NCBI GenBank assembly: GCA_038087875.1
Contig: CM075996.1
Coordinates: forward strand, 7,626,001 to 7,690,000
Source: Malacoraja senta
Lineage: Eukaryota
DNA: 64,000 nt
Reading direction: 5' to 3'
In this document: piece after piece, positions 93-61,425 of the stretch
Position numbering within the stretch: the stretch's first letter is position 1
Layout of the letters: every line of letters begins with the position of its first letter
Made by a program: the position numbers and the translations under genes
The notes under the pieces: model-generated
Database searches by the model: none
The model's input: the letters and a program-made list of their open reading frames with translations, nothing else
What the model was told of the DNA's origin: nothing

Positions 93-61425
<61,333 letters not shown>

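What the first reader, a model, noticed from the sequence alone, without database searches (positions are those of the whole stretch)
59382..59405. Loop-1 microexon QSTVLAY, an SM-B-like insert in myosin IIA, with NAGNAG acceptor
Seen: pyrimidine tract, tandem CAG CAG, 21 nt (or 18 nt, STVLAY), GTGAGT donor, phase 0-0, exactly between KSKKEQ and GELEKQ, with UGCAUG ~35 nt upstream. Established: MYH11 SM-B inserts QGPSFAY here and speeds ADP release and velocity; MYH10 has B1-type inserts at the same site; the canonical mammalian IIA lacks one. Inference: with the loop-2 cassette, this gene keeps the ancestral two-loop splicing toolkit of the smooth/non-muscle myosin II family. Similar inserts may already be annotated in other fish myh9 models.
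Basis: partly seen in the sequence, partly recalled or inferred. Interest (0 to 1): 0.75.

Follow-up and report, generated by a model that had tools for sequence, protein, structure and literature searches.

The report
Skate myosin IIA loop-1 microexon
A 21-base alternative exon adds seven amino acids (QSTVLAY) beside the ATP pocket of a skate's non-muscle myosin IIA; skate and ray transcripts use it and 21 shark and ray species share it, but it is already in public gene models, so it extends a known type of myosin switch to a paralog where mouse RT-PCR found none.

Summary
On the minus strand, a 21-nt phase 0-0 exon (59402-59382, QSTVLAY) lies between the P-loop exon (ends 59682, HKSKKEQ) and the GELEKQ exon (starts 56179). 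It has a tandem CAGCAG acceptor, a GTGAGT donor and a UGCAUG 36 nt upstream.

The gene is the skate ortholog of MYH9. Clean exons are 96.7-96.9% identical to the RefSeq myosin-9 of Leucoraja and Amblyraja. The full-length Leucoraja protein matches human MYH9 best.

RefSeq models of 21 elasmobranch species carry exactly QSTVLAY at this site, and 17 also have a partner model without it. Intronless full-length transcript contigs of little skate exist in both forms: four runs with the exon and 14 contigs without it. Two runs of another batoid also include it.

The exon lies inside the longest block (116 nt) that is invariant between this skate, Leucoraja and sawfish in the 3.5-kb intron.

In the one informative run laid on the window itself, I saw only the skipping junction.

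Only the 21-nt form is seen, never the 18-nt form. The loop-2 partner exon has a GG acceptor in this genome.

The exon is a new member of a known kind (SM-B / C1-type loop-1 microexons). It is absent from the searched literature, and the one paper that looked found none in mouse.

The parts
59682..59775 (-). Constitutive P-loop exon (GESGAGKT...HKSKKEQ); ends in phase 0 with donor GTAAGT
   Evidence: the cDNA L001 aligns to 59778-59682, and the boundary was resolved by GT/AG.
59438..59443 (-). UGCAUG (Rbfox-type hexamer) 36 nt upstream of the microexon
   Evidence: It is invariant in Leucoraja and Pristis. No binding was tested.
59403..59435 (-). Branch-point-like TTGAT plus the polypyrimidine tract and the first CAG of the tandem acceptor
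   Evidence: 16 of 20 pyrimidines. Identical in the three species except for one T indel.
59382..59402 (-). Alternative microexon 'A1', 21 nt, QSTVLAY, phase 0-0. The second CAG (59402-59400) could serve as a distal acceptor giving 18 nt.
   Evidence: It is 21/21 nt identical in Leucoraja transcripts and genome, in Pristis genome and in transcripts of another batoid.
59376..59381 (-). Donor GTGAGT of the microexon
   Evidence: Matrix score 5.6 bits, rank 30 of 37. Invariant in the three species.
59309..59424 (-). 116-nt block invariant between the window, Leucoraja and Pristis; the longest such block in the 3.5-kb intron. It covers the exon, 22 nt upstream and 73 nt downstream.
   Evidence: Whole-intron identity to Pristis is 79%; the next longest invariant block is 71 nt.
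56087..56179 (-). Constitutive exon [31 protein letters not shown]
   Evidence: The skipping junction 59682|56179 was seen in an RNA contig of run X23.
44127..44189 (-). Loop-2 'A2' exon homolog ([21 protein letters not shown]), given for context only. Its acceptor reads GG in this genome.
   Evidence: Catshark X1 carries EIKSFQRAYFYIRFPILHLEP at the same site. Leucoraja and Pristis read AG.

Best explanation
This is a genuine alternatively included coding microexon of the skate MYH9 (non-muscle myosin IIA) gene, here called A1. When the spliceosome uses the upstream AG of the CAGCAG acceptor and the GTGAGT donor, 21 nt are inserted in frame between HKSKKEQ and GELEKQ. This lengthens loop 1, at the mouth of the nucleotide pocket, by QSTVLAY. 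When the exon is skipped, the product is the canonical IIA-type short loop. The exon belongs to the same class as the MYH11 SM-B exon (QGPSF[AS]Y) and the MYH14 C1 exon (xSxxxSY), and most likely shares ancestry with them from before the vertebrate genome duplications. By analogy, inclusion is expected to speed ADP release and raise ATPase activity and sliding velocity; that step is inferred, not shown. The conserved flanks, including an upstream UGCAUG, probably carry the tissue control of inclusion; this is also inferred.
For: Anatomy. Position and register identical to chicken SM-B QGPSFSY. MYH9 identity: five of six window exons score best on human MYH9. The full-length Leucoraja protein scores 3376 bits end to end on human MYH9, against 3176 for MYH10 and 3122 for MYH11. 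Clean window exons are 96.7% and 96.9% identical to Leucoraja and Amblyraja myosin-9, and 38 exons are 97.1% nt identical to the Leucoraja transcript L001. Use in RNA: intronless full-length transcript contigs with the exon come from SRR2097067, SRR2097074, SRR088620 and SRR24105892 (Leucoraja) and from SRR6291340 and SRR6291315 (another batoid). The skipping form is on 14 contigs. Conservation: QSTVLAY is invariant in RefSeq models of 21 shark and ray species, while the flanking residues vary (K/R, D/E); 17 of these species also have a model without it. The exon lies in the longest invariant block of the intron. Family context: Y-ending loop-1 inserts appear in MYH14-type, MYH10 (teleost SGPLFY) and MYH11-type proteins. 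Functional precedent: PMC10480317 (C1 raises ATPase and motility; B1a has a small effect) and PMC6198134 (exon 5b doubles velocity).
Against: On the window itself, the only informative RNA contig (run X23) joins 59682 directly to 56179, which is skipping. Three other runs gave no exonic contigs. Inclusion is therefore shown in close relatives, not in this individual or species. A 69-aa spliced query found no short fragment carrying the insert. The splice sites are only average for this gene and are not significant by themselves. The kinetic effect is not guaranteed: human SMA and SMB were reported unresponsive to the loop-1 insert (PMC3938199). Common ancestry with SM-B and C1 rests on position, phase, length and a shared C-terminal [SA]Y, not on a tree.
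Confidence: 0.9

Rival explanations
1. The exon is real in relatives but silent in this species or individual, so only the canonical short-loop IIA is made here.
For: Only the skipping junction was seen on the window. The partner loop-2 exon has lost its AG acceptor in this genome, so species-specific loss of alternative exons does occur in this gene.
Against: The exon, both splice sites, the pyrimidine tract and 116 nt around it are letter-for-letter identical to Leucoraja, where inclusion is documented. Run X23 appears to be a related species rather than this one, because its intronic contigs differ by about 3%. Contigs also drop minor isoforms.
Confidence: 0.05
2. The exon is a chance AG...GT pair or pseudo-exon with no biological role.
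For: Decoys with equally good splice-site scores occur about once per 14 kb of intron in this gene.
Against: Transcripts include it. The peptide is invariant in 21 species. It lies in the longest invariant block of the intron. It is in exact register with SM-B.
Confidence: 0.01
3. The exon is used, but it arose independently in the cartilaginous-fish MYH9 lineage (convergent exonization) and is not homologous to the SM-B and C1 exons.
For: Sequence similarity to QGPSF[AS]Y and xSSPxSY is limited to Q1 or S/T-rich residues and the terminal [SA]Y. No bony-vertebrate MYH9 with such an exon was seen here, and mouse RT-PCR found none (PMC10480317).
Against: The exon sits in the same intron, in the same phase 0-0 and at the same 6-8 codon length. 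It ends in Y directly before GELE in all four paralogs, including teleost MYH10 SGPLFY.
Confidence: 0.2
4. The gene is not the MYH9 ortholog but another myosin II paralog, so the insert is simply SM-B or C1 under another name.
For: The exon at 20282-20626 scores marginally better on MYH11 (105 against 101 bits). GELEKQ (K rather than R) is the MYH11 spelling. Many RefSeq names are only 'myosin-9-like'.
Against: Five of six exons and the full-length ortholog match human MYH9 best, by 200 bits and end to end including the tailpiece. The short KSKK[DE]Q loop and the loop-2 sequence are IIA-like. The gene carries the homolog of the published IIA-specific A2 exon.
Confidence: 0.04

Closest known systems
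MYH11 exon 5b (SM-B / SMB isoform, insert QGPSFAY in human, QGPSFSY in chicken)
   Same: Same intron, same phase 0-0, same 21-nt and 7-aa size, begins with Q and ends with [SA]Y directly before GELEKQ. It is likewise an alternative cassette with tissue-dependent inclusion.
   Different: It lies in a different paralog (smooth-muscle myosin), and the internal residues differ (GPSF against STVL). Its kinetic effect is measured for chicken and disputed for human (PMC3938199). Nothing has been measured for the IIA insert.
MYH14 C1 insert (NM IIC1, 8 aa in mammals; SSGPVSY, TSSPASY and similar in reptiles and amphibians)
   Same: It is a loop-1 cassette ending in SY before GELE, in a non-muscle myosin II. 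It is reported to raise ATPase and motility and to be broadly expressed (PMC10480317).
   Different: It lies in a different paralog, it follows a longer constitutive loop (…RKEPGVP), and its sequence varies between species, whereas QSTVLAY is invariant across elasmobranchs.
MYH10 B1 inserts (PESPKPVKHQ; teleosts add EQNPV and SGPLFY)
   Same: They are inserted at the same site. The teleost third piece, SGPLFY, is of the same Y-ending type.
   Different: The classic B1 peptide is unrelated in sequence, is neuron-specific and has little kinetic effect (PMC10480317).
MYH9 A2 (NM IIA2, 21-aa loop-2 insert, brain; PMC10480317)
   Same: It is the only published alternative motor-domain exon of MYH9. 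Its homolog is present in this gene and in catshark models.
   Different: It sits in a different loop (actin-binding loop 2) and abolishes rather than tunes activity. The same paper found no loop-1 splicing of IIA in mouse tissues.

Membership tests
Loop-1 'Y-type' alternative microexon of class II myosins (SM-B / C1 type) | Lies in the intron between the P-loop exon and the GELE[KR]Q exon, in phase 0-0 | tested here: met
   The phmmer alignment places it exactly on chicken QGPSFSY.
Loop-1 'Y-type' alternative microexon of class II myosins (SM-B / C1 type) | 18-24 nt, encoding 6-8 residues that end in [S/A/F]-Y | tested here: met
   21 nt, QSTVLAY. Compare SSGPVSY, TSSPASY, SGPLFY and QQPAGSLAY in the paralogs.
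Loop-1 'Y-type' alternative microexon of class II myosins (SM-B / C1 type) | Both the inclusion and the skipping mRNAs exist | tested here: met
   Met in orthologs: Leucoraja transcripts L001 and L004-L006 include the exon and L007-L015 skip it. On the window itself only skipping was seen.
Loop-1 'Y-type' alternative microexon of class II myosins (SM-B / C1 type) | Inclusion changes nucleotide kinetics (faster ADP release, higher velocity) | not testable with these tools
   This needs recombinant heavy meromyosin with and without the insert. The precedents are mixed (PMC6198134, PMC3938199, PMC10480317).
MYH9 (non-muscle myosin heavy chain IIA) orthologs | Best full-length match is MYH9 rather than MYH10, MYH11 or MYH14 | tested here: met
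   The Leucoraja ortholog scores 3376 bits on human MYH9, against 3176 (MYH10) and 3122 (MYH11). Five of six window exons score best on MYH9. The window is 96.7-96.9% identical to skate RefSeq myosin-9.
MYH9 (non-muscle myosin heavy chain IIA) orthologs | Placement in the MYH9 clade of a gene tree, and conserved synteny | not tested
The window holds no neighbouring gene.
NAGNAG alternative acceptor | Both AGs of the tandem are used, giving products that differ by 3 nt | tested here: not met
   The CAGCAG is present and conserved. All 6 inclusion transcript contigs and every inclusion-form RefSeq model examined carry the Q. The distal acceptor scores 1.4 against 5.2 bits. Minor use cannot be excluded from contigs.

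The most novel reading that the evidence does not exclude
The Y-ending loop-1 microexon predates the two vertebrate genome duplications and was inherited by all four smooth and non-muscle myosin II paralogs. Cartilaginous fishes have kept the MYH9 copy unchanged (QSTVLAY) since sharks and rays split, which gives them a kinetically distinct 'NM IIA1' motor. Mammals lost the exon, or use it too rarely to detect. The 116-nt invariant flank would then be an ancient splicing-control module.
Probability: 0.55. Interest if true: 0.6.

Novelty: new member of a known kind. Interest (0 to 1): 0.45.

Why it matters
In the searched literature MYH9 has no reported loop-1 splicing. The only study that looked found no loop-1 splicing of IIA in mouse and left the existence of 'NM IIA1' open (PMC10480317).

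This exon shows that an A1 form exists, is transcribed and has been held invariant across sharks and rays. That completes the set: all four paralogs (MYH9, MYH10, MYH11 and MYH14) carry a Y-ending microexon at the same site.

It gives a natural insert for testing how loop-1 length tunes ADP release in the IIA background. It also gives a conserved intronic block for studying microexon control.

The claim is tempered because automatic RefSeq annotation already lists the isoform in many species. What is new is the recognition and the context, not the existence of the sequence.

Tried and rejected
1. Reads on the window. Four RNA runs were laid on 56000-59800. Only X23 gave an exonic contig, and it shows skipping; the other three gave nothing on the exons, probably because of the tool's filter. 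This is not evidence of absence.

2. A 69-aa spliced query against the protein collection. It returned only short fragments; none had the insert, although MYH10-B1 and MYH14-C1 fragments appeared.

3. The search of representatives with a tail exon. It gave almost only fragments, but it supplied P0194 and P0249, which were needed as long queries or scaffolds.

4. An exon-only query of 67 aa. It gave a single hit and was useless for orthologs.

5. A MAFFT alignment of 33 window exon pieces on an invertebrate scaffold, meant to build a profile. Most pieces were misplaced, so I abandoned it.

6. Genomic loci of sharks and of several rays. Either the gene range exceeded 100 kb or the file was too large, so no DNA was returned. 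Flank conservation could therefore be tested only among two skates and a sawfish.

7. A second 'QSTV' frame at 56324-56304. It looked like a duplicate of the exon, but it has a poor donor, the 13-nt similarity is within chance, and in Pristis its first codon is TAG. Rejected.

8. A B1-type exon relic upstream of A1. No candidate was found in the 279 nt between the exons.

9. RNA secondary structure around the exon. The z-score is -0.2, which is no signal.

10. Splice-site strength as proof of the exon. It is not significant alone.

11. Literature searches. No paper describes a loop-1 insert in MYH9 of any species.

Full report
**What is in the sequence.**
The window carries, on its minus strand, 39 exons of a conventional myosin II heavy chain. 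They run from a 30-nt exon at 61427-61398 to the last coding exon at 207-1.
- The P-loop exon (59775-59682) ends ...HKSKKEQ, followed by the donor GTAAGT.
- The next constitutive exon starts at 56179 with GELEKQ.
- In the 3502-nt intron between them lies a pyrimidine-rich tract, then the tandem CAGCAG (59405-59400).
- The frame CAG TCT ACG GTG TTA GCA TAC (59402-59382, QSTVLAY) follows, then the donor GTGAGT.
- TGCATG lies at 59443-59438, 36 nt upstream.

**Is it more than chance?**
By splice signals alone it is not. I built weight matrices from this gene's own 37-38 sites.
- The proximal acceptor scores 5.2 bits (rank 27 of 38), the distal acceptor 1.4 bits, and the donor 5.6 bits (rank 30 of 37).
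- Four other frame-preserving, stop-free decoys in 55.9 kb of intron are at least as strong, so about 0.25 would be expected in this intron.

The case for the exon rests on homology, conservation and transcripts.

**Which gene?**
- Five of six window exons searched against solved structures score best on human MYH9. One is marginally better on MYH11.
- A region search with a turtle MYH14-like protein as a long query brought in elasmobranch RefSeq proteins named myosin-9 or myosin-9-like.
- Clean window exons (1549 residues) are 96.9% identical to Amblyraja radiata, 96.7% to Leucoraja erinacea, 95.5% to Rhinoraja, 93.0% to Pristis and 88.0% to Hemiscyllium.
- The full-length Leucoraja protein aligns end to end with human MYH9 at 3376 bits, against 3176 for MYH10 and 3122 for MYH11.
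- A Leucoraja transcript contig is 97.1% nt identical to the window over 38 exons.

The window is therefore MYH9 of a skate close to, but not identical with, those species. It reads HKSKKEQ where they read HKSKKDQ. Earlier notes of this scan also call the genome a skate. I did not build a tree or test synteny.

**Is the exon used?**
- On the window itself, one RNA contig of run X23 joins 59682 directly to 56179, which is skipping. The three other runs gave no exonic contigs.
- The protein collection gave the decisive evidence. RefSeq models of 21 elasmobranch species (9 batoids, 12 sharks) carry exactly QSTVLAY between HKS[KR]K[DE]Q and GELE[KR]Q. Seventeen of these species also have a sister model 7 residues shorter that lacks it.
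- Logan assemblies of public RNA runs, which are independent of annotation, contain intronless contigs of 6-8 kb with the complete open reading frame.
- The inclusion form is in SRR2097067, SRR2097074, SRR088620 and SRR24105892. All four are Leucoraja erinacea, judged by 25-mers shared with its genome.
- The inclusion form is also in SRR6291340 and SRR6291315, from another batoid that is 90.7% nt identical to the window.
- The skipping form is on 14 Leucoraja contigs.
- Within one 2015 run series, some runs assembled the inclusion form and others the skipping form. This points to regulated rather than noisy use. I do not know which tissues the runs come from.

**Conservation.**
- The 21 nt are identical in the window, in Leucoraja (genome and transcripts), in Pristis (genome) and in the second batoid's transcripts. 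The neighbouring P-loop exon differs at 11% of positions in that species.
- Elasmobranch introns evolve slowly. The whole intron aligns to sawfish at 79% identity and to Leucoraja at 95.8%.
- Even against that background, the exon sits in the longest three-way invariant block of the intron: 116 nt, 59424-59309. The next longest is 71 nt.
- The tandem acceptor, the UGCAUG and 73 nt downstream of the donor are all invariant.
- Shark genomic DNA could not be fetched, because the genes exceed 100 kb.

**Relation to known inserts.**
- The insert aligns column for column with the chicken gizzard SM-B peptide QGPSFSY.
- In the proteins fetched, Y-ending loop-1 inserts directly before GELE occur in several paralogs:
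  - MYH14-type genes: SSGPVSY, TSSPASY, NSSAMSY, TTVSVSY.
  - Teleost MYH10: SGPLFY, after the classic PESPKPVKPQ.
  - A cod MYH11-like model: QQPAGSLAY.
- With the IIA exon, all four paralogs have one. The most economical reading is a single origin before the vertebrate genome duplications. That is an inference from position, phase, length and the terminal [SA]Y.

**Function.**
- Loop 1 borders the nucleotide pocket.
- Published work attributes roughly doubled velocity to MYH11 exon 5b (PMC6198134).
- It attributes higher ATPase and motility to IIC1 and only a small effect to IIB1a (PMC10480317).
- One study found human SMA and SMB insensitive to the insert (PMC3938199).
- I therefore expect IIA1 to be a faster motor with a lower duty ratio, but I hold that at about even odds.
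- By the usual positional rule, the conserved upstream UGCAUG suggests that Rbfox proteins repress inclusion. This is untested.
- The flanks show no unusual RNA structure (z-score -0.2).

- All six inclusion contigs and every inclusion-form model examined use the upstream AG. The 18-nt STVLAY form was never seen.
- The loop-2 partner exon is real. Catshark X1 and X2 carry a 21-aa insert at ADLWRD|VDRIVG, and the window encodes its homolog. In this genome, however, its acceptor reads GG where Leucoraja and Pristis read AG.
- The 'two-loop toolkit' is therefore a property of the lineage and may be half disabled in this species.

**Novelty.**
- Five full-text searches found no description of a loop-1 insert in MYH9 of any species.
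- The one paper that tested for it found none in mouse tissues and left 'NM IIA1' open.
- Against that, automatic annotation already lists the isoform in many elasmobranchs.
- I file it as a new member of a known kind, of moderate interest.

Noticed in passing
window 44127-44189 (-), acceptor at 44190-44191: The loop-2 'A2' exon homolog encodes [21 protein letters not shown]. Its acceptor dinucleotide reads GG in this genome, while Leucoraja (L003) and Pristis (L016) read AG. The catshark RefSeq models X1 and X2 include the homologous 21-aa insert.
   Followed up: yes
window 56324-56304 (-): A second frame begins QSTV (QSTVASK) behind a tandem AGCAG, 145 nt upstream of the GELEKQ exon. Its donor is poor, the 13-nt similarity to the real exon is within chance, and its first codon is TAG in Pristis. 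It is not an exon.
   Followed up: yes
window 34507-34502 and 17675-17670 (-): Two introns of the gene begin with GC instead of GT: AAG|GCAAGT after exon 34616-34508 and CAG|GCAAGT after exon 17888-17676. The boundaries were fixed by cDNA alignment.
   Followed up: partly
window 58903-58833, 57924-57883 and 57681-57482 (-): These are further blocks of the loop-1 intron that are highly conserved between the skates and sawfish: two are invariant for 71 and 42 nt, the third is 90-95% identical to sawfish. Short RNA contigs of runs X23 (58782-59020, 59060-59215) and X6 (57875-58028) overlap the first two blocks. They have no other copy in the window. They could be pre-mRNA remnants, regulatory elements or unannotated exons; I found no convincing frame.
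   Followed up: partly
window 61427-61398 (-): A 30-nt constitutive exon (…DREDQSILC) lies upstream of the P-loop exon and matches the Leucoraja transcript 30/30.
   Followed up: partly
window 54404-54778, 60867-61208, 3975-4361 (-): These are intronic open frames with the motif ...FSQRVV(N/S)[12 protein letters not shown]..., which look like tails of retrotransposon reverse transcriptases and recur in several introns. I did not search them against any library.
   Followed up: no
proteins P0294, P0295, P0339, P0348, P0349, P0370-P0376: Teleost MYH10 models combine up to three loop-1 pieces (PESPKPVKPQ, then EQNPV or TQNAV, then SGPLFY or SGALFY). Turtle and snake MYH14-type models carry a B1-like piece (LESPNLARHP, LEFLNEAKQ) or a Y-type piece (SSGPVSY, TSSPASY). 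The ancestral intron may therefore have held two kinds of microexon.
   Followed up: no
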